A stretch of DNA of 64,000 bases, from positions 1 through 64,000 of the forward strand of contig CDRNVI010000053.1 of assembly GCA_977017575.1 (NCBI GenBank), in the 5' to 3' direction. Under the pieces are notes generated by a model. That model was not told the DNA's origin and did no database searches. It saw only the letters and a program-made list of their open reading frames with translations. Made by a program: the position numbers and the translations under genes. The stretch comes from Paramoeba atlantica. Taxonomy: Eukaryota; Protista; Discosea. Shown in pieces: positions 1-11,966 of the stretch; the first letter of the stretch is position 1; every line of letters starts with the position of its first letter.

Positions 1-637
1 CGTGGATCCCCCCCTGGATCCCCCCCTGGACCCCCCCTGGATCCCCCCCTGGATCCCCCCCTGGATCCCCCCCTGGATCCCCCCCTGGATCCCCCCCTGG
101 ATCCCCCCCTGGACCCCCCCCTGGATCCCCCCCTGGATCCCCCCCTGGATCCCCCCCTGGATCCCCCCTGGACCCCCCCTGGATCCCCCCCTGGATCCCC
201 CCCTGGATCCTCCCCTGGATCCCCCCCTGGATCCCCCCTTGGATCCCCCCCTGGATCCCCCCCTGGATCCCCCCCTGGATCCCCCCCTGGATCCCCCCCT
301 GGATCCCCCCCTGGATCCCCCCCTGGATCCCCCCCTGGATCCCCCCCTGGATCCCCCCCTGGATCCCCCCCTGGATCCCCCCCTGGATCCCCCCGTGGAT
401 CCCCCCCTGGATCCCCCCCTGGACCCCCCCTGGATCCCCCCCTGGATCCCCCCCTGGATCCCCCTGGATCCCCCCCTGGATCCCCCCCTGGATCCCCCCC
501 TGGATCCCCCCCTGGATCCCCCCCTGGATCCCCCCCTGGATCCCCCCCTGGATCCCCCCCTGGATCCCCCCCTGGATCCCCCCCTGGATCCCCCCTGGAC
601 CCCCCCTGGACCCCCCCTGGATCCCCCCTGCCCCCCC
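1..637. repeat. Terminal tandem array of 12-bp unit GATCCCCCCCTG (opposite strand ATCCAGGGGGGG), about 52 copies; candidate telomere
   Basis: Directly visible from base 1. C-run length varies 6-8, with variants GGACCCC and CCGTGGAT, and the array degenerates at about 590-640 before unique sequence. C-rich strand lies 5', the orientation of a left telomere. Confidence 0.9.
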
Positions 638-720
638 TTCGGCGAATTGTGCGCCATAGAAAACTCTCGTGCAAGAAACCGACTTTTCTTATCGTCGAAA
701 AATAGCTACACCCCCCTCTC

Positions 721-804
721 ATAAATAATGATAATGATAATAATAATTTTTCTGAGATTATCATTATTATTATCATTATTATTTTTATTATCATCATTAT
801 TTAT
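721..804. repeat. AT-only imperfect inverted repeat, (ATA/ATG)n followed by (TAT/CAT)n
   Basis: Begins ATAAATAATGAT and ends ATCATTATTTAT (reverse complements); the internal ATAATG/CATTAT trinucleotide tracts are complementary. Confidence 0.7.
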
Positions 805-1160
805 GAACGCAATAAGGGGTGATCAGAAACAAACATACATCTGTGTAGTATATTTTTGTGGACGAAGGGAAATTGTTTGTTTACGAAGGGAAAAAGTAAG
901 ACGAGGTTAAAGAGATTACGGAAAAAATCTCGAGCTGACATGGAGGAGTAACGGTGGAATGAAAAGTTTTTGATAATTTTTGAGTAATTTTCACAGTCCG
1001 AGGTGATTTTTTTTTTCCAATTATCATTATTAATGAAGGGGGGTGTATTCTACTCATGATTTGTGACGCAATTTTGTGACGCCCTATTTTTTTAATGTCC
1101 TATTTTTACTTTAGCGAATCAAAACGATCCAGAAATTTATCGTCGCATCAAGCGGAAAGA

Positions 1161-1185
1161 TTCTTCCTTGTTTTGCCTTTTCTAG
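1161..1185 (+). promoter_or_regulatory. Putative trans-splice acceptor (polypyrimidine tract + AG) for AHCY
   Basis: TTCTTCCTTGTTTTGCCTTTTCTAG lies 11 nt upstream of the ATG at 1197. Kinetoplastid context is inferred. Confidence 0.5.
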
Positions 1186-1196
1186 TATCCCCTTAC

Positions 1197-2510
1197 ATGT
1201 CTGACTACAAAGTACGTGATATAACGCTTGCCGAGTGGGGACGCAAGGTAATAACCCTCTCTGAGGCCGAGATGCCGGGTCTCATGGAGCTGCGCCGTGA
1301 GTATGCTTCATTACAGCCATTACGCGGTGCCCGCATAGCTGGTTGTCTTCACATGACCATCCAGACCGCAGTGCTGATAGAGACGCTAACCCAATTGGGC
1401 GCCGAGGTCCGGTGGGCTTCCTGCAACATTTTTAGTACCCAGGACCACGCTGCTGCGGCGGTGGCGAAGACCGGGGTCGCGGTTTTTGCCTGGAAGGGAG
1501 AGACAGAGGAAGAATACCTGTGGTGCATTGAACAGACACTGAAGGGCTTCACTGGGGGCGATGGAGCCCCCAACATGATTCTCGACGATGGGGGAGACCT
1601 CACAAACATGGTGTTGGACCAGCACCCCGAGCTTGCGCGGAACATCTATGGCATATCCGAAGAGACCACGACCGGGGTAAAAAACTTGTTCCGTCGTGCC
1701 AAGGCTGGTACCCTCTCCATTCCTTCGATCAATGTCAATGACAGCGTAACGAAGTCAAAATTCGACAACCTCTATGGCTGTCGTGAGAGTCTTTTAGACG
1801 GTATTAAGCGCGCGACTGACGTGATGGTAGCAGGGAAGACAGCGCTTGTATGTGGGTATGGAGACGTGGGTAAGGGATGCGCGGCAGCCCTTCGTAACTT
1901 CGGAGCCCGTGTCGTAGTGACGGAGATTGACCCTATCAATGCCCTGCAGGCCAGTATGGAAGGGTACGAGGTGAACACAGTAGAGAATTGCGTTGAGCAA
2001 ACCCATATTTTTGTCACGTGCACGGGAAATGCAGACATTATTCGAGGTGAACACTTTGGACGCATGCGGGATAACACCATTGTGTGCAACATTGGTCATT
2101 TCGACAATGAACTCCAGGTCAACTGGCTGAAGGAAAATGCTGATCGAGTGGAGATTAAGCCCCAAGTTGACCAATTCACCCTACGCAACGGCCGACGCAT
2201 CATTCTGCTTGCGGAGGGGCGATTGGTGAACCTGGGCTGCGCCATGGGCCATCCCTCCTTCGTTATGTCCACTTCCTTCAGCAATCAAGTACTCGCTCAG
2301 ATTGAATTATGGACCAATCGCGAGTCCAAAAAGTATCCTCGAGGCGCGCAGACAGAGGTCTACTTTCTGCCCAAGGAGCTTGATGAGAAGGTTGCGCGTG
2401 CGCATCTGGGAATGTTGGGCGTAAAATTGACGGAGCTGCTCCCTTCGCAAGCGAAGTATATCGATGTATCTGTGAATGGCCCATACAAGCCTCCACACTA
2501 CCGTTATTAA
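1197..2510 (+). CDS. AHCY: S-adenosylhomocysteine hydrolase (adenosylhomocysteinase)
   Basis: Motifs [63 protein letters not shown]-terminal [10 protein letters not shown]. Start MSDYKVRDI at 1197 gives 437 aa. Confidence 0.98.
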
Positions 2511-3356
2511 AGGAGATTTACGCATTTTGTTGCGGTAAAGCTAAAGGAAATCGAGCGCATCGAGCGAGACAACAGTATTTCTTATAGAGTTCTATTTTTA
2601 ATTTCATGATTCTTTAATTCCAGGTTGCGAATTATATTCATATTATTTTTTCTCATTATAAGTGTCTGCATTTTTCAGAAAAAGATATTTTTGATTTTAT
2701 CTAATAGTTACACCCGACCTTGATTATATTGATTTGTTTGTGTCAATGATATTACCTTCAAATTTTGTCATGTTTTCAATGTTGCATTTTTCCGTACTAA
2801 GTTTGAGTCTTAGATAATACGACTTTCTACACTACTACAATTAAGGTCCCAAATTTGAAATCCGAACAAAAAATAAATGTCTTGATATTGAATGAACGCA
2901 GTAGTACATTGAGTGGGCTAAGAAGAAACTAATCCTACACTACAATATGCGTCAGGGTATGACAAAGCAAAAACATTATATTCGACGTACAAAAGATCTG
3001 CACGTTCGCTTAATTTGTAATTTGTTTTTAAAGCTATTAAAAGATTTCTTCGCGCGAATAAAGATACCCATACAGTATATTGAAGCTACAAGTAACACAA
3101 GACAGGACTATATCCTTATCATGATTACCACATACCATGATACTCAAATATTTTAGCCCAACTCATTCCGTTCTTTTACACAACCCCACCACCAGAACCC
3201 CTCTTCACACATGACCCAGACAACCTCCCCTACCCCCCTTTGTCTCTCCACCTCACCGTTCTTCACCCCTCCCCCTCCCTCTCCTCTTCCCTAAAAACCC
3301 AACCTCTTGCTCAAAACCAACACACACAGATCCCCCCCCCCACACACCCCCACCCC

Positions 3357-4928
3357 ATGCGAAAACCAACCCTTCGTCTCTCCCCCCCCTCCCCCTTCCG
3401 TCCCCTCTTCGCCCATCTCCGCATCCCGGAGGGCCACTGGACGGACTGGGGGCTCCTCGACCCCCTGCGCCCCCCCTCGCTCCACCCCCTCGGGGACAGC
3501 CTGATCCAGCGCGTGGTGCACGACGCCCTGGTGGCGGGGGTGGTGGGGGGGCAGCGGGGTGGGGGGGGTGGACCGGTGGCCAGGGAGGGGGGAGGGGGGG
3601 GTCCACCCCCAGCAACAACAACAACAACAACAACAACAACCCCCACAACAACAACAGGAGTCCCGGATATCTCCTCCTCCCCGTTTTTCCTCTCCCCGGA
3701 GTTCCTCCGTGGGTGCGGGGCTCCGTTTCTGCATCCGTACTACCTGCGGATGGTGGGGGAGGAGGTGGGGTTGCTGGAGCTGGGGTGGGGGCCTGGGGAG
3801 GGGGGGGAGGACGCGGGGAGGGCCTCCCCCCGGCTCTTCGCGGGGAGCCTACACGCCCCGGATGGTTTCTCCACCTCGCTGTGCCTCCCGGGGGACCGTT
3901 TTGCCCCCTCGCCGTTGCCGCGGCGGTTGGCGCATTTGATGGCGGCGGTGAGGATGGAGAGGGGGAGGGGGAAGGCGGAGGAGGTGGTGAGGAGGTGGTT
4001 TAGGATTCCCGGGGAGGGAGGGGGTGGGGGTGGCTCTTCTTCTCCGCTTTGCTCTTCTCCTCCTTCTGCTCTCGATGAGGAGATCGCGTCCTCTCCCGTT
4101 CCTGTGTCATGGGGACGGGCGGGGTTGGAGGCGCTACACCGGGTAGTGAAACGGTATCCCCATGCGACAGGGTCGGTGGCGTTGTCGGTGATGTCGGTGT
4201 GTGGGATTGATCCGGTGTGGGAGGTGCAAATAGAGCCGGAGGGGGGAGGGGCGGGGGGAGAAGAGGGGGGAGAGTGGTCTTCTTCGAATACGTACTCCCC
4301 GGTTGCTGAAAAAAGGGAGGAACCTTCCACCACGTCCACCACCCCGAGTCTCCTCACGGATGGGCTCCAACGGATGTACACAATGACTCCAGAGGCGTTG
4401 GACGCGGCGTTACAAGATCCCGGCTCGGGAATTTATCAAGGGAGTGAGTATGCCGGGAATCCGAATGACCCACCCCTCCCCTCAGGGTGGATGTCCCATA
4501 CCGAGTCTGTGCCGTACCAAAAACAACCCCTCCCCCCTCCCCGGAGCTACCTCGACACGATATGCAGCGTTCCGACCCCGTCTGCTGGTTCGGTCGGGAC
4601 CGAGGGGAGTGGATTCTTCACCTCCGCCCTGCGTCGCTTCCCGACCTCCTCGGAGCGCCCGGAATCCTATTTCGAGCACAACAAGGACATCGGCCGCGGG
4701 GTACGCTACCAAACCCATGGGTTAGATGCGGCCCGGTTCGTGGAGAGTCACTGTGTGCCGATGCGGCGACGGTTTTGTGTACGCGCGTACAACCGGGTAA
4801 CGAACGCGGTGATTGCCACAGCCACAGCCGGGAGTTTCACCGAGGCCCGGAATGAGGTCCTGGAGAGGTTTCTGGTGGGGCTAGCCGCGGATCTGCAGCG
4901 TTTGGACTATAGGGGTAGGGCGGGATGA
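3357..4928 (+). CDS. Hypothetical protein, possibly degenerate RNase III-like + dsRBD-like (mL44-type architecture), with low-complexity inserts
   Basis: Long ORF; first in-frame ATG at 3357. SLHPLGDSLIQRVVHDAL resembles the RNase III LEFLGD helix, and C-terminal FCVRAYNRVTNAVIATATAGSFTEARNEVL resembles a dsRBD end. Assignment is pattern-based only. Confidence 0.45.
   Translation: MRKPTLRLSPPSPFRPLFAHLRIPEGHWTDWGLLDPLRPPSLHPLGDSLIQRVVHDALVAGVVGGQRGGGGGPVAREGGGGGPPPATTTTTTTTTPTTTTGVPDISSSPFFLSPEFLRGCGAPFLHPYYLRMVGEEVGLLELGWGPGEGGEDAGRASPRLFAGSLHAPDGFSTSLCLPGDRFAPSPLPRRLAHLMAAVRMERGRGKAEEVVRRWFRIPGEGGGGGGSSSPLCSSPPSALDEEIASSPVPVSWGRAGLEALHRVVKRYPHATGSVALSVMSVCGIDPVWEVQIEPEGGGAGGEEGGEWSSSNTYSPVAEKREEPSTTSTTPSLLTDGLQRMYTMTPEALDAALQDPGSGIYQGSEYAGNPNDPPLPSGWMSHTESVPYQKQPLPPPRSYLDTICSVPTPSAGSVGTEGSGFFTSALRRFPTSSERPESYFEHNKDIGRGVRYQTHGLDAARFVESHCVPMRRRFCVRAYNRVTNAVIATATAGSFTEARNEVLERFLVGLAADLQRLDYRGRAG
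3612..3655 (+). repeat. (CAA)n microsatellite encoding a poly-Thr tract
   Basis: gcaacaacaacaacaacaacaacaacaac...cacaacaacaaca is visible in the sequence. Confidence 0.9.
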
Positions 4929-5132
4929 GAAAAAGGGGAGAATAGGGGGGGGGGGGTTGTGGTCTTTGTAAGCGTAAAAATAATAAGAAAGGTGTAGCCT
5001 TTGGAGTGCTTCGTTTCGAAAGGATGAGGGGGGGGGGATGTTTTTACTGTTTGTACGAAACCCTTTCTTGCGAAGAAAAACCAAAAACCCTTGCCCTACA
5101 CTCCTCTTTTTCCTTTACCTCTTTTCCCCCCC

Positions 5133-6917
5133 ATGCAACCCCAAGTCCTCCTCCTCCGCGAGGGCACGGACTGCTCCCAAGGCAGGCCCCAGCTCCTCTC
5201 CAACATCCACGCCTGTCTCGCGGTCGTGGACCTTGTGCGCTCCACCCTGGGGCCGTGCGGGATGGACAAGCTCCTCCGCGCGGGCTCGGGCCCCTGCGTG
5301 ATCAGCAACGACGGGGCGACGGTGCTGTCGGGCCTCGAGGTGGTCCACCCCGCGGCGCGGTGCCTGGTGGAGATGGCGCAGGCGCAGGACGCGGAGGTCG
5401 GGGACGGCACCACCACCACCGCGGTGCTCGCGGGGGAGCTCCTGCGCGAGGCCAGGCTGCTGCTCGAGGACGGGTTCCACCCCCGGGTGATCGTCGCGGC
5501 GTACCGCGCGGCGTGTGAGAAAGCGGTGGAGGTGGTGCGCACGCGGGCGGTGCCGTTTGGGGCGATGGGTGAAGAAGAGGAAACAGAAGAGAAAACGGAT
5601 AAAAAGGAAAGTGAGGAGAAGAAAGGGATCACTCAGGATCGTAAATTGCATGAACTGTTGGTGAAATGTGCCGCGACGGCGTTGAACTCGAAATTGATCT
5701 CCGCCCAGCGGTTTTATTTTGCGGAGATGGCCGTGAATGCGGTGTGTTGTTTAGGGGAGAGCAAAGATATCAATCGGATTGGCATCAAACAAGTCCATGG
5801 TGGAGGGGTGCGGGATTCGTTTCTGGTGAACGGGGTAGCGTTTAAAAAGACGTTTAGTTATGCGGGGTTTGAACAACAACCGAAACAGTTTGAGAAGCCC
5901 ACGGTGTTGTTGTTAAATGTGGAGCTGGAGTTGAAGGCAGAGAAGGATAATGCGGAGGTTCGGATTAAGGGCCCCTCGGAGTACCAAGCGATTGTGGATG
6001 CGGAGTGGCGGATTATCTATGAAAAGCTGGAGAACTGCGTAAACAGCGGGGCACACATTGTGCTCTCCAAGCTCCCGATCGGGGATTTAGCCACGCAGTA
6101 CTTTGCGGATCGTGGGATCTTTTGTGCTGGGCGGGTGAGCGCGGAGGACATGACCCGAGTCGCGGTGGCTACCAATGCCAAAATCCAATCCTCCACCCAT
6201 GACCTTCTCCCGGAGCATTTAGGCTCCTGTGGTGCGTTCGAGGAAAAGCAAGTCGGGGATGAGCGCTACAACCTGTTTACCGGCTGTGATGGGGCAAAAA
6301 CCGCCACCCTTGTGCTTCGTGGCGGTGCGCCACAATTTATTGAAGAAGCCGAACGTTCCCTGCACGATGCCATTATGATTGTCAAGCGCGCGTTGCAGCA
6401 CAAAGCCATTGTCGCGGGCGGGGGAGCCATCGATATGGAAATTGCCAAGGAGCTCCGGGACTATGCTCGATTTGAAATCCAGGGAAAGCAGCAGCTCGCG
6501 GTGCACAGCTTCGCGAAAGCCATGGAGGTCATTCCCCATACGATTGCGGAAAATGCCGGACATGATGCCGCGATGATTTTAAATAAACTAAGGCACCGAC
6601 ACCATACGGATCAAAAGGAAGGAAAGTGGTATGGGGTGGATGTTAGCAATGGGGATATTGTAAACACGTATGAGACATTTGTGTGGGAACCCGAGATTGT
6701 AAAGATTAACGCACTGCACAGTGCCACCGAGGCGGCGTGTGTGATTTTAAGCATCGACGAGACAATTAAAAACCAAGAGAGTGAGGCTGGGGCCGGGTCC
6801 CCGGGGGCGCGAGGTGGGGGTGGAGGGGCACGCACGAATCTGTCCCAGCAGGGGATGGCGGGGATGGCAAAGGGTCTTCCCGGGGTGAAGACGCTGAAGG
6901 GACGAGGGGGGCGATAG
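5133..6917 (+). CDS. CCT7: T-complex protein 1 subunit eta (CCT chaperonin)
   Basis: MQPQVLLLREGTD start, TLGPCGMDK, ISNDGAT, AEVGDGTT, AFKKTFSYAGFEQQPK, ERSLHDA; eta-type signatures. Confidence 0.95.
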   Translation: MQPQVLLLREGTDCSQGRPQLLSNIHACLAVVDLVRSTLGPCGMDKLLRAGSGPCVISNDGATVLSGLEVVHPAARCLVEMAQAQDAEVGDGTTTTAVLAGELLREARLLLEDGFHPRVIVAAYRAACEKAVEVVRTRAVPFGAMGEEEETEEKTDKKESEEKKGITQDRKLHELLVKCAATALNSKLISAQRFYFAEMAVNAVCCLGESKDINRIGIKQVHGGGVRDSFLVNGVAFKKTFSYAGFEQQPKQFEKPTVLLLNVELELKAEKDNAEVRIKGPSEYQAIVDAEWRIIYEKLENCVNSGAHIVLSKLPIGDLATQYFADRGIFCAGRVSAEDMTRVAVATNAKIQSSTHDLLPEHLGSCGAFEEKQVGDERYNLFTGCDGAKTATLVLRGGAPQFIEEAERSLHDAIMIVKRALQHKAIVAGGGAIDMEIAKELRDYARFEIQGKQQLAVHSFAKAMEVIPHTIAENAGHDAAMILNKLRHRHHTDQKEGKWYGVDVSNGDIVNTYETFVWEPEIVKINALHSATEAACVILSIDETIKNQESEAGAGSPGARGGGGGARTNLSQQGMAGMAKGLPGVKTLKGRGGR

Positions 6918-7315
6918 GGGGATTAGGGAGAGAGTGAAATGTGGAGGGGGAGTTGAGGGGGGATACGTGGAAAAGGAAACGGAGGCTGATTTGTATGGAT
7001 AACATTTGATATGTATTGGTTTTCAAAGCTTTTGGCAATACGCGCATGTAGTGTGGCAACATTTCATCTGATATATGATCATCTGGTTTTACGAATATTT
7101 TTCTATCTGACGCGCTATTGGCACAAGTACGAATGCGTTTTTTACCCCCATGGACATCGGAATATATTTCCCAACATATAGAATAGAATGAACTACGTTA
7201 GCATTGATGCACTGTTTTCATTTTATCATTAGAAAACACAATGTAACGAGAGCATCAAGGCTACAATGTAATCAAACTTGTGTCGTTGGTCCGGTGCTGT
7301 TTCTGAAGATCCAGC

Positions 7316-8299
7316 ATGATTCCGCGTGTCATACAACCGTATTCGAAATGTCGCTTCACTTTGCCAAAGTCGTTCATATCTCATTACCATTTTTCAGAGG
7401 TGCGGTCCACGATGGACGAGATTCGCCGTCTTATTACGGAAGAAAACAAGTTTCCTTCTCCTGGGACTACGGTTTGCCATCGACAGCGTTCCACTCACAT
7501 CTGCCCGTTATTGTGCACCGCTGACACACAGGTAATGGGACGTGGTAGCTCTGGACGTGTCTGGCATTCGTTCCCTGGTAATTTATTCGCAACGATAGGC
7601 GTTCGGGCTTCTAGCGTGAATGGAAGTGTAGTTCTACGTGATGGCACTTTGTTATGGGCACTGGTTGGCATATGTCTTCATGATACTTTGAGCAAAATGA
7701 AATTTGAATCAAGAAAAGAAAACAGAGGTAAAAAAATTTCTTTGAAGTGGCCGAATGACGTATTGTTAGGGGACAGAAAAGTAGCAGGGACCTTGATAGA
7801 ATTTTACAAGGAATATTACCTAATAGGCATCGGTGTAAACATCAGCAGTGCGCCGCAAATAAACGATGGAGGTCGACTGGCAACCTCATTGCTTGATGGC
7901 GCCGACAATGTGGGTTGTATAACTGGAAAGAATGCCAAAAGAACACACCCCGAGTATATTAGTAAAGTGTCCCGCGAAATACTTCGTCGGTTTATTTCTC
8001 AAATAAGACATTCCTTGGAGAATAACGAAAAGGGTTCAGAAGCTTTGATTTACAATGGAGATGACATTCACCCACACTTTATGAGTGGCGAGGGGTTGTT
8101 GAAAGACTATGAAAAGCGCATGGACCTGTCCATTACTGTGTCTCGTAGGCGAGAAAAGAACTCACAGGGGGGCTTTATAGACGAGAAGAATCATCAAAAA
8201 AATTCTCTTCGTGTATCCGGACTACAAACTGATGGAGGACTTTTAGTATTCGATAAAAACTTGAAAAGGGTTGTTTTGTACAACGACTACTTGGACTAA
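7316..8299 (+). CDS. Biotin--protein ligase (BPL/BirA family)
   Basis: HFSEVRSTMD, QVMGRGSSGRVWHSFPGNLFAT, KWPNDVLLGDRKVAGTLIE, IGIGVN motifs. Confidence 0.92.
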   Translation: MIPRVIQPYSKCRFTLPKSFISHYHFSEVRSTMDEIRRLITEENKFPSPGTTVCHRQRSTHICPLLCTADTQVMGRGSSGRVWHSFPGNLFATIGVRASSVNGSVVLRDGTLLWALVGICLHDTLSKMKFESRKENRGKKISLKWPNDVLLGDRKVAGTLIEFYKEYYLIGIGVNISSAPQINDGGRLATSLLDGADNVGCITGKNAKRTHPEYISKVSREILRRFISQIRHSLENNEKGSEALIYNGDDIHPHFMSGEGLLKDYEKRMDLSITVSRRREKNSQGGFIDEKNHQKNSLRVSGLQTDGGLLVFDKNLKRVVLYNDYLD

Positions 8300-9056
8300 T
8301 GAAGAGATATAGATTATCTACGACTTAAAGCGGATCGTTTTTAGATGTCTCTTTCTATGTTATCAATCTTGCCTTCGACATGCACTAAAAAATACGTACG
8401 TACATCGAAAAAAGTGTCTCTCTCCGCGCTCTTCCCCCTCGGCGTGACGGCGTCTTTTCGTTTTGCGACCTTCACGTCTCCCACCCTCGTACAGCAACCT
8501 AAAGTATCTGATACTGCTAACGTGGAGGGAGCGGAGGTCTGGGACCATAGGGGCGCATGTGGAATGGTCTGGGGTAGGGAGTTATTGTTCAGTGAGGTAG
8601 GGAGTGAGGGAGGGGAACCATGAGAGGGTTAAGGGGAGTAAGAAGGGTGAAGGGTTAGCAAGGGTGAAGGGTTAGTAAGTGGGAAAGTTGGAAATATAGA
8701 TAAAAAAGCTAGACTCTATACTACTCTATACTCCCCCCAATTATTTGCAAAGAAAACATACATTATATTTTGTAGTACAATACTGCACAGTGTAATATAT
8801 TTTGACGCCACATTTTTCCTTCTAGAGCTTTAGTGCTTTTGAAAAGGTCTATTAGATTCATGTGTGATGAGTACACGAGTCTTTCAAGATAATGCCTTAT
8901 CGAGTCTCCTTAGGATGCATACTGCTTGCTATTGATACTTCATCTTGATTATCGATCTTTGGTTGCTGTTGTTCTTCAATGACGTATCACTGAGCGCTGG
9001 TCAGTATCCTTTCTTTTCACCACACTATTAATTACGCAAGCGCAAAGATTGCCTTC

Positions 9057-11966
9057 ATGTTTCGACGGAACCGTTTTCATCGTATTAACATAGGTACTTT
9101 GCCTCAATCCATTAAAATCGAATTAAGGCAGCGACTGCGGAAAGATTATCCCCACGGCAAGCTCCCAAGGATTAACCCTTCATCCAAAAAGCCTTCCTTT
9201 TCTAACACCGAAACACCTTTCCAAAGAAACGACACGAAATCATGGATTCGAAACATGTTGGTGAAACCCCAACACGAGAGCCTCGAACTGACAATTTCCC
9301 GTGAGGACCCCGACAGCGCCTATATGGACACCGAGGATGGGAAGCTGGACGTTAGTGCGGAGGACGCCGTCGAGGTACTAAGTGAGTGTATAGCCAGTCC
9401 TCTGTCCGAAGCTGTAAACCTTTCATCGAGTCAAAAAACCCAATCTCTGTTGCAGGCGGCACAAAACTACCACGCGGACGAAAATGATATCACGTCTCAC
9501 GTCGAGCCTGAAGTTCTCTCCGGTCCTAATACCATTGGGGAAAGTCTTCATCGCAGAGGAATGCTTCCTGTGTATGAAATTACGGCCATGGACGCTCTTT
9601 TACAAAGACAGGGGGTTGTGTTTTTTGCTGTTTCAAGTTCGTATCCGAAGTTTGTTCGTGCAGCACTGTACGCACAACTACAAAAATGTGCAGATTTTCA
9701 GCCCGTACGAGGGGCTCAATCGGACAGCGCGGTGTTTGCTCTCACTCCGGCCTCACCCGTTTTAGAATCCGCAACAAAGTTGCGCTGGCTGCAGCGTATG
9801 GTTGCCTCAGGGGTATTACACATGGTAAACATTGGCTCAGTGTTGCTCACCTCTTTGTTGCATTTTTCAAACGTCGAGTTGGTGTTTGATCTGTCCTTAT
9901 GTGCACCGGGTCGGTTTTCGAAGGGATCCATGCCGTCTACGATTTCAACAGAGAGAATAGAGACAGGGCATATGGATATGTTAACTACGGGAACACATGT
10001 GTGTTTGTGCACTCCCTCAAAGGATTCGTTGAACGCTCGACGCGTCGAATCGTTCATGCGGCAGAACGGATATGTGAACTATTCACTTCGTTCCTTATCC
10101 GAACATGAGAATAGTGAAGATTGGGACAGAAGCGTATTTCGTGAAACTCAGCGTGTAATCGCAATCTTTTCTCCGTCCACAATGAACTTCGCACATAGGC
10201 CCAGGTGGAAACTTGATTTTCGGCTAGAGAATTCTAATAGAACCAACAATTCGAGTAGGAAAGACTACCAAGAAAACTTTAACAGTTATGAGGGAATTAA
10301 ATACCCGGTCTCATCAGAACTGAAAACATTTTCTGAAAACTTGAAGGAAGCTTTGCTTGCTGCCGTTGAATCACTGATTAAACATTTAAGTCAAGTTTAT
10401 GGATCTGCCGTGGTTCATATTTATTATCAAACATGCTCTCTCTTGAGGGAGGAAAATGAGTCCGTTCTGATCGACGTTACTGAACGAGCCAAAGAAAGGT
10501 TGAACGGCATGCCACTTGCAGGTTTCAGTTGCGAAGTATCGACTGCAGATTTGTTACACGAATGTTCGTACACGGCTCTGAACCTTCTGGAACCTTATCT
10601 GAAAATGTCAGCAGAGTTACCGGGAGCATACTATGTTTTACCCACTGAAACTGACACAGATGGAGCCTTTTTGGGAGTAATGCAAATAAAGTACCTGTAT
10701 ACACGTGAAGTACAGAAAACGAATGAGTCCGAAAACAGATCCGAGTTTACGAGTCCTTCCATCAGTGAGAGCTTCCTACAATTCTTCGGTTGCAATGACA
10801 CGGCCGCTCGATCGAAATCAATCAAGATTGTTGAAGAAGGAGATTCCGTTCGAGCTATGCCACCTTCCTGGACATGTACCTTACGCTGCAAAAAGGATAC
10901 TTTAAATTCTGGAATTACTCTCCTCGAAAAATACAAAATTTCAGTTCCAGGTTTGCAACTAGCATCTGAACACACTGTAGAGCAACCGATCGAATACGAT
11001 GCTTATTTTGCGACGTCCAGCATGTCATGCAATCGCTACCTATCATCATACTGGGATCTGTCGGAGAAAAATTGTGGAGGACGTTCACATACTGACAAAG
11101 TCGAAAGCGACACACATTTTGCACGTCATTCCTTCTTTTCATTCCGACATATCCGGCTCGCTTGTATTCAAGATGTCCTACTCCTTCTTTATCTTGGCCA
11201 CCTCTCGAATCCTGTTTTGCGTCACGTCAAACAGTTTCACAAGGGTTGGGATGCATGTGAATCCGCAGCCATATTAAAAAATAGAAGCCAAGCGATGGGT
11301 TCCGAATTTAATAAACCGCTTCACCTTTTAACAACGCCTCATATTGTTCCTGGGGCTGTGCTCATTACATGTCCACTTCCCGTGCCTATGACTCCGAACT
11401 TCGCGCCAAGTGATAAAAAGTCGAATATTCACATTGTCGCGAATATTTCGTACCCTACGGCAGAATTCTGTGACTCTGGAGCTTTACATCTGAGTGCGGG
11501 AAATTCAAATTTTGAGTTAACGCTTCCTGAAGTGGGCTTTCTTCCCGTATCAAGCAGAAATGTGGAGCTGCAAGGCCTCACAAGCAACGAAACACAAGTT
11601 TCTGGAAATTCGGTTCCCGAGAAAGCACATTCATTCGAAATGTCTCCCCTGCACGAGCCCTCTCTCATGGCTCTACGTGACGCTGTTTGCTACTGGTGTA
11701 AGTTAGCCCATGTGGAGTATTCGCTTTCTAATCTTCTGGAAAGATTTTATCCCGCTGAAATTGAGGAACACATCCGAACAAAGGAAAAACGTCTTATCGA
11801 GCGTTACGAGACAAGATCTAGGGTTTCGGAATCGGACGTTCGAAATCGTCTTAAGGAGTTTCGCTCCTGTGATGCAGAAAGCTGGGGCAAAGATGACACC
11901 TTTTTCGAGAAGATGAATCAGGAGGGGAAAACTATTTCTACCGAGTACGTGGTTACTTCAAGTTGA
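9057..11966 (+). CDS. Hypothetical 969-aa protein, possibly highly divergent TruD/PUS7-like, probably mitochondrial
   Basis: Long ORF with an Arg/Lys-rich N-terminus. Ordered weak matches to TruD motifs: GTHVCLC, NGYVNY, IQDVLL, IVPGAVLI, SFEMSP...MALRDAV. Confidence 0.5.
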   Translation: MFRRNRFHRINIGTLPQSIKIELRQRLRKDYPHGKLPRINPSSKKPSFSNTETPFQRNDTKSWIRNMLVKPQHESLELTISREDPDSAYMDTEDGKLDVSAEDAVEVLSECIASPLSEAVNLSSSQKTQSLLQAAQNYHADENDITSHVEPEVLSGPNTIGESLHRRGMLPVYEITAMDALLQRQGVVFFAVSSSYPKFVRAALYAQLQKCADFQPVRGAQSDSAVFALTPASPVLESATKLRWLQRMVASGVLHMVNIGSVLLTSLLHFSNVELVFDLSLCAPGRFSKGSMPSTISTERIETGHMDMLTTGTHVCLCTPSKDSLNARRVESFMRQNGYVNYSLRSLSEHENSEDWDRSVFRETQRVIAIFSPSTMNFAHRPRWKLDFRLENSNRTNNSSRKDYQENFNSYEGIKYPVSSELKTFSENLKEALLAAVESLIKHLSQVYGSAVVHIYYQTCSLLREENESVLIDVTERAKERLNGMPLAGFSCEVSTADLLHECSYTALNLLEPYLKMSAELPGAYYVLPTETDTDGAFLGVMQIKYLYTREVQKTNESENRSEFTSPSISESFLQFFGCNDTAARSKSIKIVEEGDSVRAMPPSWTCTLRCKKDTLNSGITLLEKYKISVPGLQLASEHTVEQPIEYDAYFATSSMSCNRYLSSYWDLSEKNCGGRSHTDKVESDTHFARHSFFSFRHIRLACIQDVLLLLYLGHLSNPVLRHVKQFHKGWDACESAAILKNRSQAMGSEFNKPLHLLTTPHIVPGAVLITCPLPVPMTPNFAPSDKKSNIHIVANISYPTAEFCDSGALHLSAGNSNFELTLPEVGFLPVSSRNVELQGLTSNETQVSGNSVPEKAHSFEMSPLHEPSLMALRDAVCYWCKLAHVEYSLSNLLERFYPAEIEEHIRTKEKRLIERYETRSRVSESDVRNRLKEFRSCDAESWGKDDTFFEKMNQEGKTISTEYVVTSS

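What the first reader, a model, noticed from the sequence alone, without database searches (positions are those of the whole stretch)
1..637. Candidate non-canonical telomere: 12-bp (ATCCAGGGGGGG)n instead of TTAGGG in an apparent kinetoplastid
Seen: the window begins inside about 52 tandem copies of GATCCCCCCCTG, C-rich strand 5', degenerating at the inner junction as telomeric arrays do. Known: characterised trypanosomatids use TTAGGG. Inference: this is a chromosome end with a lineage-specific G7-containing repeat, implying a changed telomerase template or another maintenance mechanism. Every unit carries a GGATCC (BamHI) palindrome and the G strand should form quadruplexes. The 6-8 C variation could be telomerase stuttering or a homopolymer sequencing error.
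Basis: partly seen in the sequence, partly recalled or inferred. Interest (0 to 1): 0.85.

Follow-up and report, generated by a model that had tools for sequence, protein, structure and literature searches.

The report
C7-rich 12-bp array at contig end
A real run of 53 copies of a 12-base, C7/G7-rich unit forms the first 637 bases of a contig from a spliced-leader (kinetoplastid) protist and points the way a telomere should, but it is rare in the genome and I could not show that it is a chromosome end, so a new kinetoplastid telomere stays possible and unproven.

Summary
Window 3-628 is 52.9 tandem copies of TGGATCCCCCCC: 53 units, 40 exact, and the last four inner units are all variant. It is the only such array in the window. 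Contigs built from three other sequencing runs also contain it, so it is not a long-read artefact.

The organism is a kinetoplastid. The first gene, SAHH, receives a spliced leader at base 1160, and every large ORF in the 64 kb lies on the + strand.

For a telomere:
- The array sits at the window start, with the C-rich strand reading inward.
- It is short (0.6 kb).
- A second junction of the same polarity exists in run X3.
- No outer-side junction was listed.

Against "the" telomere:
- Word depth amounts to only about 2-4 arrays of this size genome-wide (up to about 20 on the lowest baseline).
- Unchecked notes from this scan report a purine-only 10-mer at four or more other contig ends of the same assembly, and ends "capped with telomere repeats". 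None of those I could retrieve mentions this 12-mer, so the scan has not reported it elsewhere.
- No telomerase RNA template, TERT or related array was found.

Best reading (0.42): a low-copy minisatellite at a few chromosome ends. Main rival (0.30): an internal array where the assembly stopped. A genome-wide telomerase repeat: about 0.12. I did not lay reads on the array itself.

The parts
1..637 (+). Tandem array of 53 units of 12 bp (TGGATCCCCCCC). The C-rich strand reads 5'->3' inward, and the G-strand unit is ATCCAGGGGGGG. Units 585-637 are degenerate.
   Evidence: High word depth in independent runs.
585..637 (+). Inner degenerate edge of the array. Its four variant units end in ...TGCCCCCCC before unique DNA.
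   Evidence: Word depth falls here, as expected for locus-specific variants (bin 570-751 mean 584 against about 3767 at place 599).
638..711 (.). Short unique spacer between the array and a dispersed repeat.
712..1043 (.). Context only. A segment bounded by inverted repeats (arms 712-746 and 1009-1043) with an AT-rich palindrome at 719-806. It behaves as a dispersed repeat, probably a MITE-like element.
   Evidence: inverted repeats. (fold z -5.3). (depth 113-357 in X1 against 6 for the neighbouring single copy; loose ends at 1016 and 1048 lead into other DNA).
1158..1160 (+). AG trans-splice acceptor (1158-1159). The spliced leader is joined at 1160. This is the first mapped RNA-processing site of the gene cluster, 522 bp from the array.
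   Evidence: Transcript L001 begins with ...ACAGTTTCTGTACCTTGTTG joined to window 1160. The same leader appears as a loose end at 1159 and 5102 in run X2.
1197..2510 (+). S-adenosylhomocysteine hydrolase gene (437 aa). This expressed housekeeping gene is the first gene next to the array.

Best explanation
The array is a genuine, low-copy G7/C7 minisatellite that forms the outermost assembled DNA of this chromosome arm in telomere polarity. I think it most likely marks a real chromosome end. It would be either the terminal tract itself or a telomere-associated tract just inside a cap that was not assembled.

It probably belongs to only a few chromosome ends and is not the repeat that a single telomerase lays down on every end. 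Such arrays are kept up by replication slippage and unequal exchange between ends. Hairpins between the GGATCC palindromes of adjacent units, and G7 runs able to form quadruplexes, would favour both processes.

Shown: the array, its polarity, its degenerate inner edge, its low abundance, a second junction of the same polarity, and an expressed gene cluster starting 0.5 kb inside it. Inferred: that the contig end is a physical end, and how the array is maintained.
For: - Array and anatomy.
- It is real in other runs: summed depth about 3767 in X1 and 3292 in X3 at place 599.
- It is not a large satellite that would defeat a long-read assembler. The window's array holds 27 unit-equivalents of canonical 31-mers. 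Canonical-type contigs sum to about 2250-2370 against single-copy depth of about 35 in X3. That is roughly 2-4 arrays' worth, a few kb in total. A contig that stops after only 0.6 kb of such a repeat therefore fits reads really ending there better than an unresolvable array (inference).
- Polarity is right. X3 holds a contig in which the C-rich array runs into different DNA after place 620, which is a second junction of the same polarity. No junction on the array's outer side was listed.
- The six T-less units are scattered, not periodic.
- Hairpin potential on both strands: z -2.7 and -2.9.
- Different terminal repeats at other contig ends of the same assembly (unchecked scan notes) fit end-specific arrays better than one template.
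Against: - No read or contig evidence shows that DNA stops at base 1. I left most of the array out of read laying because that tool says it turns away long repeats.
- In one search, 3 loose ends were not shown and 6 were dropped at repeats in X3, so an outer-side junction could have been hidden.
- With X1's lowest baseline (6x) the estimate rises to about 14-23 arrays' worth, which is closer to what many ends would need.
- G-rich and homopolymer-rich tracts are under-represented in short reads and can cause coverage loss in long reads (general knowledge). Both the low abundance and the contig end could therefore be technical.
- The second junction may share the window's inner variants. It could then be an allelic or structural variant of this same locus and not another end.
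Confidence: 0.42

Rival explanations
1. Internal array with an assembly break. The 12-mer tract lies inside a chromosome, for instance at the start region of this gene cluster. The contig stops in it because homopolymer-rich, quadruplex-prone DNA loses long-read coverage or cannot be overlapped.
For: - In Perkinsela relatives SAHH is internal and is the first gene of a + strand cluster at a divergent strand switch. A gene cluster starting right here is what an internal switch region would look like.
- All ORFs run away from the array.
- Scan notes report that other contig ends of this assembly also stop in difficult repeats, such as the GA-only 10-mer and 17/18-mers (unchecked).
- The unit is 75% G+C with a 7-base homopolymer.
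Against: - The total abundance is only a few kb, so the tract is short enough for long reads to span.
- Both junctions seen have telomere polarity and none has the other. That outcome has about a 1 in 4 chance under this model.
- There is no synteny with Perkinsela beyond SAHH itself, so the strand-switch analogy is weak.
Confidence: 0.3
2. This is the organism's telomere, made by a telomerase whose RNA template has changed to a CCCCCCCUGGAU-like sequence, and it caps all or most chromosomes.
For: - Correct polarity, G-cluster unit, 0.6-kb length and degenerate inner units.
- One recurrent variant type is scattered along the tract, as in telomerase-made arrays with template slippage.
- A second junction has the same polarity.
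- There is no TTAGGG in the window.
- Only one scan note on this genome contains the word TTAGGG, and it does so to say 'non-TTAGGG'.
Against: - Abundance is only a few arrays' worth.
- A different repeat is reported at four or more other contig ends, other ends are reported as capped by 'telomere repeats', and a 'telomerase-template-like 11-mer' is noted on this same contig 566 kb away (all unchecked AI notes).
- No note I could retrieve mentions this 12-mer elsewhere.
- No RNA or contig with 1.5 or more units exists in JGI collections beyond chance single hits. One JGI sample holds this organism's SAHH transcript. I could not confirm that the scanned collection includes that sample.
- Reviews state that kinetoplastid telomeres are TTAGGG (PMC8311970).
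Confidence: 0.12
3. Reiterated head of a mobile element. Retroelements of this genome are reported to begin with long arrays of a 17/18-bp leader, and the 12-mer would be such a leader array belonging to an element.
For: - Scan notes describe LINEs and retroposons of this genome that carry hundreds of copies of their own first 17-18 bases (unchecked).
- A dispersed inverted-repeat element lies 75 bp inside the array.
Against: - No element body follows the array. After 74 unique bases and a small non-coding repeat comes an expressed housekeeping gene.
- There is no reverse transcriptase ORF and no poly(A) end in 638-1196.
- The second junction leads into different DNA.
Confidence: 0.06
4. Not a real feature: a library or consensus artefact of the assembly.
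For: Some of the homopolymer length variation (5-8 C) could be consensus error at a thinly covered contig end.
Against: The array's words occur at depths of thousands in contigs from two other DNA runs. The T-less variant is also carried by high-depth contigs.
Confidence: 0.03

Closest known systems
Canonical kinetoplastid telomere, (TTAGGG)n made by telomerase (TERT plus a trans-spliced telomerase RNA), as reviewed in PMC8311970
   Same: Position at a sequence end. The G-rich strand runs 5'->3' outward. Short tandem unit with a G cluster. Degenerate inner repeats.
   Different: The unit is 12 bp with G7 and has no similarity to TTAGGG. Abundance is far below what all ends would need. No matching template RNA is known or was found.
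Long-unit telomerase telomeres, e.g. Allium CTCGGTTATGGG (12 nt) and the 23-25-nt units of Candida and Kluyveromyces (from my own knowledge)
   Same: They show that telomerase can make units of 12 nt or more that end in a G run.
   Different: In those organisms the same unit sits on every chromosome end and a matching template RNA has been identified. Neither is shown here.
Clade-specific non-canonical end repeats in lineages without the ancestral repeat, e.g. root-knot nematodes (Meloidogyne hapla, PMC12643312, seen by title), and satellite-type ends of Chironomus and Anopheles (own knowledge)
   Same: Chromosome ends carry lineage-specific or end-specific tandem arrays in place of the ancestral short repeat, and recombination is a likely means of upkeep.
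   Different: Those cases rest on chromosome-scale censuses and cytology. Here there is one contig end plus one extra junction.
Telomere-associated (subtelomeric) G-rich minisatellites of trypanosomatids and other eukaryotes (own knowledge)
   Same: Short G/C-rich tandem units next to chromosome ends, low copy number, differences between ends, and maintenance by slippage and unequal exchange.
   Different: Such tracts normally lie inside a canonical terminal tract, and none is assembled here.
Contig breaks at difficult repeats in long-read assemblies (GA-rich, G-quadruplex or homopolymer-rich tracts; own knowledge)
   Same: A contig that stops inside a short, compositionally extreme tandem array. 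Other contigs of the same assembly reportedly stop in GA-only arrays.
   Different: The polarity of both junctions seen fits a telomere, and the total amount of the repeat is small.

Membership tests
Telomerase-made telomere | Lies at the physical end of the chromosome: reads stop in it at varied lengths, and it is BAL31-sensitive | not testable with these tools
   Only Logan contigs were available and they cannot show molecule ends. I did not lay the array itself because read laying says it turns away long repeats. The window opens inside the array.
Telomerase-made telomere | G-rich strand runs 5'->3' towards the end | tested here: met
   The C-rich strand reads inward from base 1. The second junction in X3 has the same polarity.
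Telomerase-made telomere | The same repeat sits on all or most chromosome ends | tested here: inconclusive
   Word depth equals about 2-4 arrays of this size (X3, or X1 at 31.5x), or about 14-23 on X1's 6x baseline. Unchecked scan notes report other repeats at other contig ends. I could not read the other contigs.
Telomerase-made telomere | A telomerase RNA whose template holds a little more than one unit, and a TERT gene | tested here: inconclusive
   No unit outside the array in the window. No Rfam family in the window. JGI scans gave 0 hits for 31 nt and 41 single hits for 19 nt, none from the sample that holds this organism's transcript. I could not search for TERT because I had no seed sequence from a tool.
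Telomerase-made telomere | Homogeneous outer repeats and degenerate inner repeats | tested here: met
   The last four units are all variant against 9 of the other 49. The edges of ordinary satellites degenerate in the same way, so this does not discriminate.
Telomere-associated or end-specific minisatellite | Low-copy tandem array adjoining chromosome ends, present at some ends only, with unique DNA on its inner side | tested here: inconclusive
   Low copy number and two different inner flanks are shown. Location at a true end is not shown.
Retroelement leader array (17/18-mer heads reported in this genome) | The array is directly followed by the element's body (ORFs, poly(A) end) and the same junction recurs at many loci | tested here: not met
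   The array is followed by 74 unique bases, a small inverted-repeat element and the SAHH gene. There is no RT ORF. The second junction differs.

The most novel reading that the evidence does not exclude
This free-living kinetoplastid has given up TTAGGG. Its chromosomes end in lineage-specific arrays that differ between ends: the G7 12-mer here and, according to scan notes, a purine-only 10-mer elsewhere. That would imply either a telomerase with a changed or multiple templates or a recombination-based, telomerase-independent way of capping ends. It would be the first such case in Euglenozoa.
Probability: 0.13. Interest if true: 0.9.

Novelty: new member of a known kind. Interest (0 to 1): 0.45.

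Why it matters
All kinetoplastids studied so far are reported to use TTAGGG with a conventional telomerase (PMC8311970). Their telomere proteins (TRF, RAP1, TIF2), base J and, in trypanosomes, antigenic variation are all understood around that repeat.

A kinetoplastid that caps chromosomes with a G7 12-mer, or with different arrays on different ends, would show that this system can be replaced within the group. It would also offer a natural test of what the end-binding proteins recognise.

If the tract is only an end-associated or internal minisatellite, the value is practical. It flags a sequence class at which this assembly stops, so the 'non-canonical telomere' calls made on this genome should be checked together.

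Tried and rejected
- **Literature.** Six core strings of the unit on both strands returned only primers and barcodes. Searches on Perkinsela, Neobodo, bodonid or free-living kinetoplastid plus telomere found no description of such a repeat. The spliced-leader string was found in no paper.
- **Public DNA.** A 31-nt probe gave 0 hits in JGI metagenome contigs. A 19-nt probe gave 41 hits, all single occurrences with no array.
- **Protein-space search.** I translated both strands of the array to catch ORFs that gene callers would place over the same array in other assemblies. Only unrelated low-complexity proteins came back.
- **Rfam on the window.** No family was found.
- **Synteny with Perkinsela contigs.** Only SAHH is shared, so the contigs say nothing on whether the end is ancestral.
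- **Exact SAHH protein in other assemblies.** Only one culture-type JGI transcript carries it, with no second genomic copy.
- **Retroelement-head idea.** Rejected because no element body follows the array.
- **Artefact idea.** Rejected because the words are abundant in other runs.
- **Array transcription.** I considered reading the low array signal in the RNA-like run X2 (depth about 30) as telomeric transcription. I dropped this because trace DNA of a multi-copy repeat explains it equally well.

Full report
**What is there**

The window opens inside a tandem array. Tandem Repeats Finder gives 3-628, period 12, 52.9 copies, 96% matches, consensus TGGATCCCCCCC (sequence read). A 19-nt probe with up to two mismatches hits 44 times, all inside 3-591, and never in shuffled sequence.

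Parsing the units gives 53 units, of which 40 are canonical. The 13 variants are:
- six units in which the T of GGATCC is lost or changed (TGGACCCCCCC five times, TGGACCCCCCCC once), at 27, 110, 169, 420, 596 and 607;
- three units with shorter C runs;
- three single substitutions;
- the junction unit.

The last four units (585-637) are all variant, against 9 of the other 49, so the inner edge is degenerate. GGATCC is present in 47 of 53 units. The window holds no TTAGGG tract, no purine 10-mer tract and no further copy of the unit.

**Is it real DNA?**

Three public runs of one study hold the flank. I laid their contigs on window 570-6000. I kept within the operators' 6,000-letter limit. I also left most of the array out on purpose, because the tool states that it turns away stretches with a long repeat.

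The array's words are very abundant in the two DNA-like runs. Summed contig depth at place 599 is 3767 in X1 and 3292 in X3, and about 2370 and 2250 of that comes from canonical-type contigs. The T-less variant is carried by high-depth contigs too. The array is therefore not a long-read consensus artefact, although some of the C-run length variation may be.

Run X2 behaves as RNA. Its contigs start with the spliced leader at 1159 and 5102, and intergenic DNA is not covered.

**Organism and context**

The first gene (1197-2510) is S-adenosylhomocysteine hydrolase. Its exact product is encoded by one transcript in a JGI culture-type transcriptome. That transcript begins with ...ACAGTTTCTGTACCTTGTTG joined to window 1160, behind an AG at 1158-1159. 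The same leader appears as loose ends in X2.

All ORFs of 200 aa or more in 16-64 kb, and nearly all larger ones in the first 16 kb, lie on the + strand. Among them are a CCT chaperonin and a lipoate/biotin ligase-like protein. The window is therefore one polycistronic cluster of a kinetoplastid running inward from the array.

The nearest named SAHH relatives are Perkinsela species at 82-83%, with Trypanosoma at about 77%. In Perkinsela contigs the gene is internal, 100-160 kb from contig ends. It is the first gene of a + cluster at a divergent strand switch, and nothing but SAHH itself is shared with the window.

Between the array and the gene lie 74 unique bases. They are followed by a segment bounded by inverted repeats (712-1043), which includes an AT-rich palindrome. 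That segment is a dispersed repeat: its depth is 113-357 against 6 for the neighbouring DNA, and its loose ends lead elsewhere.

**Evidence for a chromosome end**

- The polarity is right. The C-rich strand reads inward, so the G7 strand would run 5'->3' to the end.
- The tract is short (0.6 kb) and the repeat is rare. The window's array holds 27 unit-equivalents of canonical 31-mers. Single-copy depth is about 35 in X3. In X1 it is either 6 (contig 977-3600) or 31.5 (contig 3661-8505). The genome therefore holds only about 2-4 arrays' worth, or about 14-23 on X1's 6x baseline. This is not a satellite too long for long reads to cross, so a contig that stops after 0.6 kb suggests that the reads stop there. 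That last step is inference.
- X3 contains a contig in which the C-rich array continues, after place 620, into different DNA (GGTCCGAAAAATAC...) that is absent from the window. This is a second junction of the same polarity.
- No junction on the array's outer side was listed. However, three loose ends were not shown and six were dropped at repeats, so this absence is weak evidence.

**Evidence against its being the organism's telomere**

- The same abundance figure cuts the other way. An assembly of 245 pieces has far more ends than a few arrays can cap, unless short reads strongly under-sample this G/C-homopolymer tract.
- The scan's own notes on this genome are AI notes. I treat them as leads, and I could not check them. 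They report:
  - a purine-only 10-mer, (CCTCTTTCTT)n, at four or more other contig ends, also in telomere polarity (s1-381693, s1-366998, s1-369897, s1-403651);
  - ends 'capped with telomere repeats' and CCCTAA(A/T) motifs (s1-369816, s1-389474, s1-392744);
  - a 'telomerase-template-like 11-mer' on this very contig (s1-377636).
- None of the notes I could retrieve mentions the 12-mer. One telomerase template cannot make both a 10-mer and a 12-mer.
- Searches for a template-bearing RNA or for the array in other data were blank or gave chance hits only.
- I had no tool-derived TERT sequence to search with.

**The main rival**

The tract could be internal, with the assembly breaking in it. Its composition (75% G+C, 7-base homopolymers, quadruplex-prone, hairpins between GGATCC palindromes) is of a kind that loses coverage. 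Other contigs of this assembly reportedly stop in GA-only arrays, a known weak spot of circular-consensus reads (my knowledge). A gene cluster starting right at the tract is what a strand-switch region would look like, as at Perkinsela's SAHH. Against this rival stand the small total amount of the repeat and the fact that both junctions seen have telomere polarity.

**Verdict**

| Reading | Probability |
|---|---|
| Low-copy minisatellite at a true chromosome end, present on a few ends only and kept by slippage and unequal exchange | 0.42 |
| Internal tract with an assembly break | 0.30 |
| Genome-wide telomerase product with a new template | 0.12 |
| Mobile-element leader array | 0.06 |
| Artefact | 0.03 |

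The remainder is left open. No paper I could search describes this repeat or any non-TTAGGG telomere in kinetoplastids, so if the novel reading were true it would be new. The tests that would decide it need the raw long reads and the other contig ends. They are listed under next steps.

**Limits**

- All three runs come from one study and may be the source of the assembly, so they are not independent support.
- Logan contigs cannot show molecule ends.
- The depth figures are sums of contig means and are rough.
- That the window's base 1 is the contig's first base is an inference.

Noticed in passing
window 712-1043: A segment bounded by 35-nt inverted repeats (712-746 and 1009-1043) contains an AT-rich near-palindrome at 719-806 (fold z -5.3). 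Word depth is 113-357 in X1 against 6 next door, and loose ends at 1016 and 1048 lead into other DNA. It is probably a MITE-like dispersed element sitting between the array and the first gene.
   Followed up: partly
window 977-8505: In run X1 the contig over 977-3600 (SAHH) has depth 6 and no differences. The contig over 3661-8505 has depth 31.5, with 10 substitutions and 6 gaps across 3661-6000, the part laid on the window. The five-fold step is unexplained. It could reflect strain or haplotype heterogeneity at this chromosome end, a duplicated segment, or coverage bias. X3 shows no such step.
   Followed up: no
window 1159-1160 and 5102: Two mapped spliced-leader addition sites (SAHH and the CCT chaperonin gene). 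The 3' part of the leader reads GATACAGTTTCTGTACCTTGTTG. This differs from the prokinetoplastid-specific string quoted in PMC7859406, and I found it in no paper.
   Followed up: partly
window 3300-5130: A GC-rich island with ten C or G homopolymers of 7-12 bases and a (CAA)n tract, in and around ORF 3240-4928. That ORF has no Pfam match. RNA contigs of X2 cover only 4377-4918 of it, so the gene model is doubtful.
   Followed up: no
L002, L004, L005 (Perkinsela-type contigs), around 9400-10000: In three Perkinsela-type long contigs SAHH is the first gene of a + strand cluster. It lies about 240-570 bp from the first gene of a diverging - strand cluster (DnaJ, Tim10-like, M24 peptidase, Coq4). 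No gene other than SAHH is shared with the window.
   Followed up: yes
L009, L030, L042; L014, L032, L045, L046; L019, L036; L033, L041: The 19-mer C7-TGGAT-C7 recurs as a single copy with the same flanks in groups of contigs from a few JGI metagenomes, so it belongs to dispersed elements of unrelated organisms. It is not tandem and is not related to the array.
   Followed up: partly
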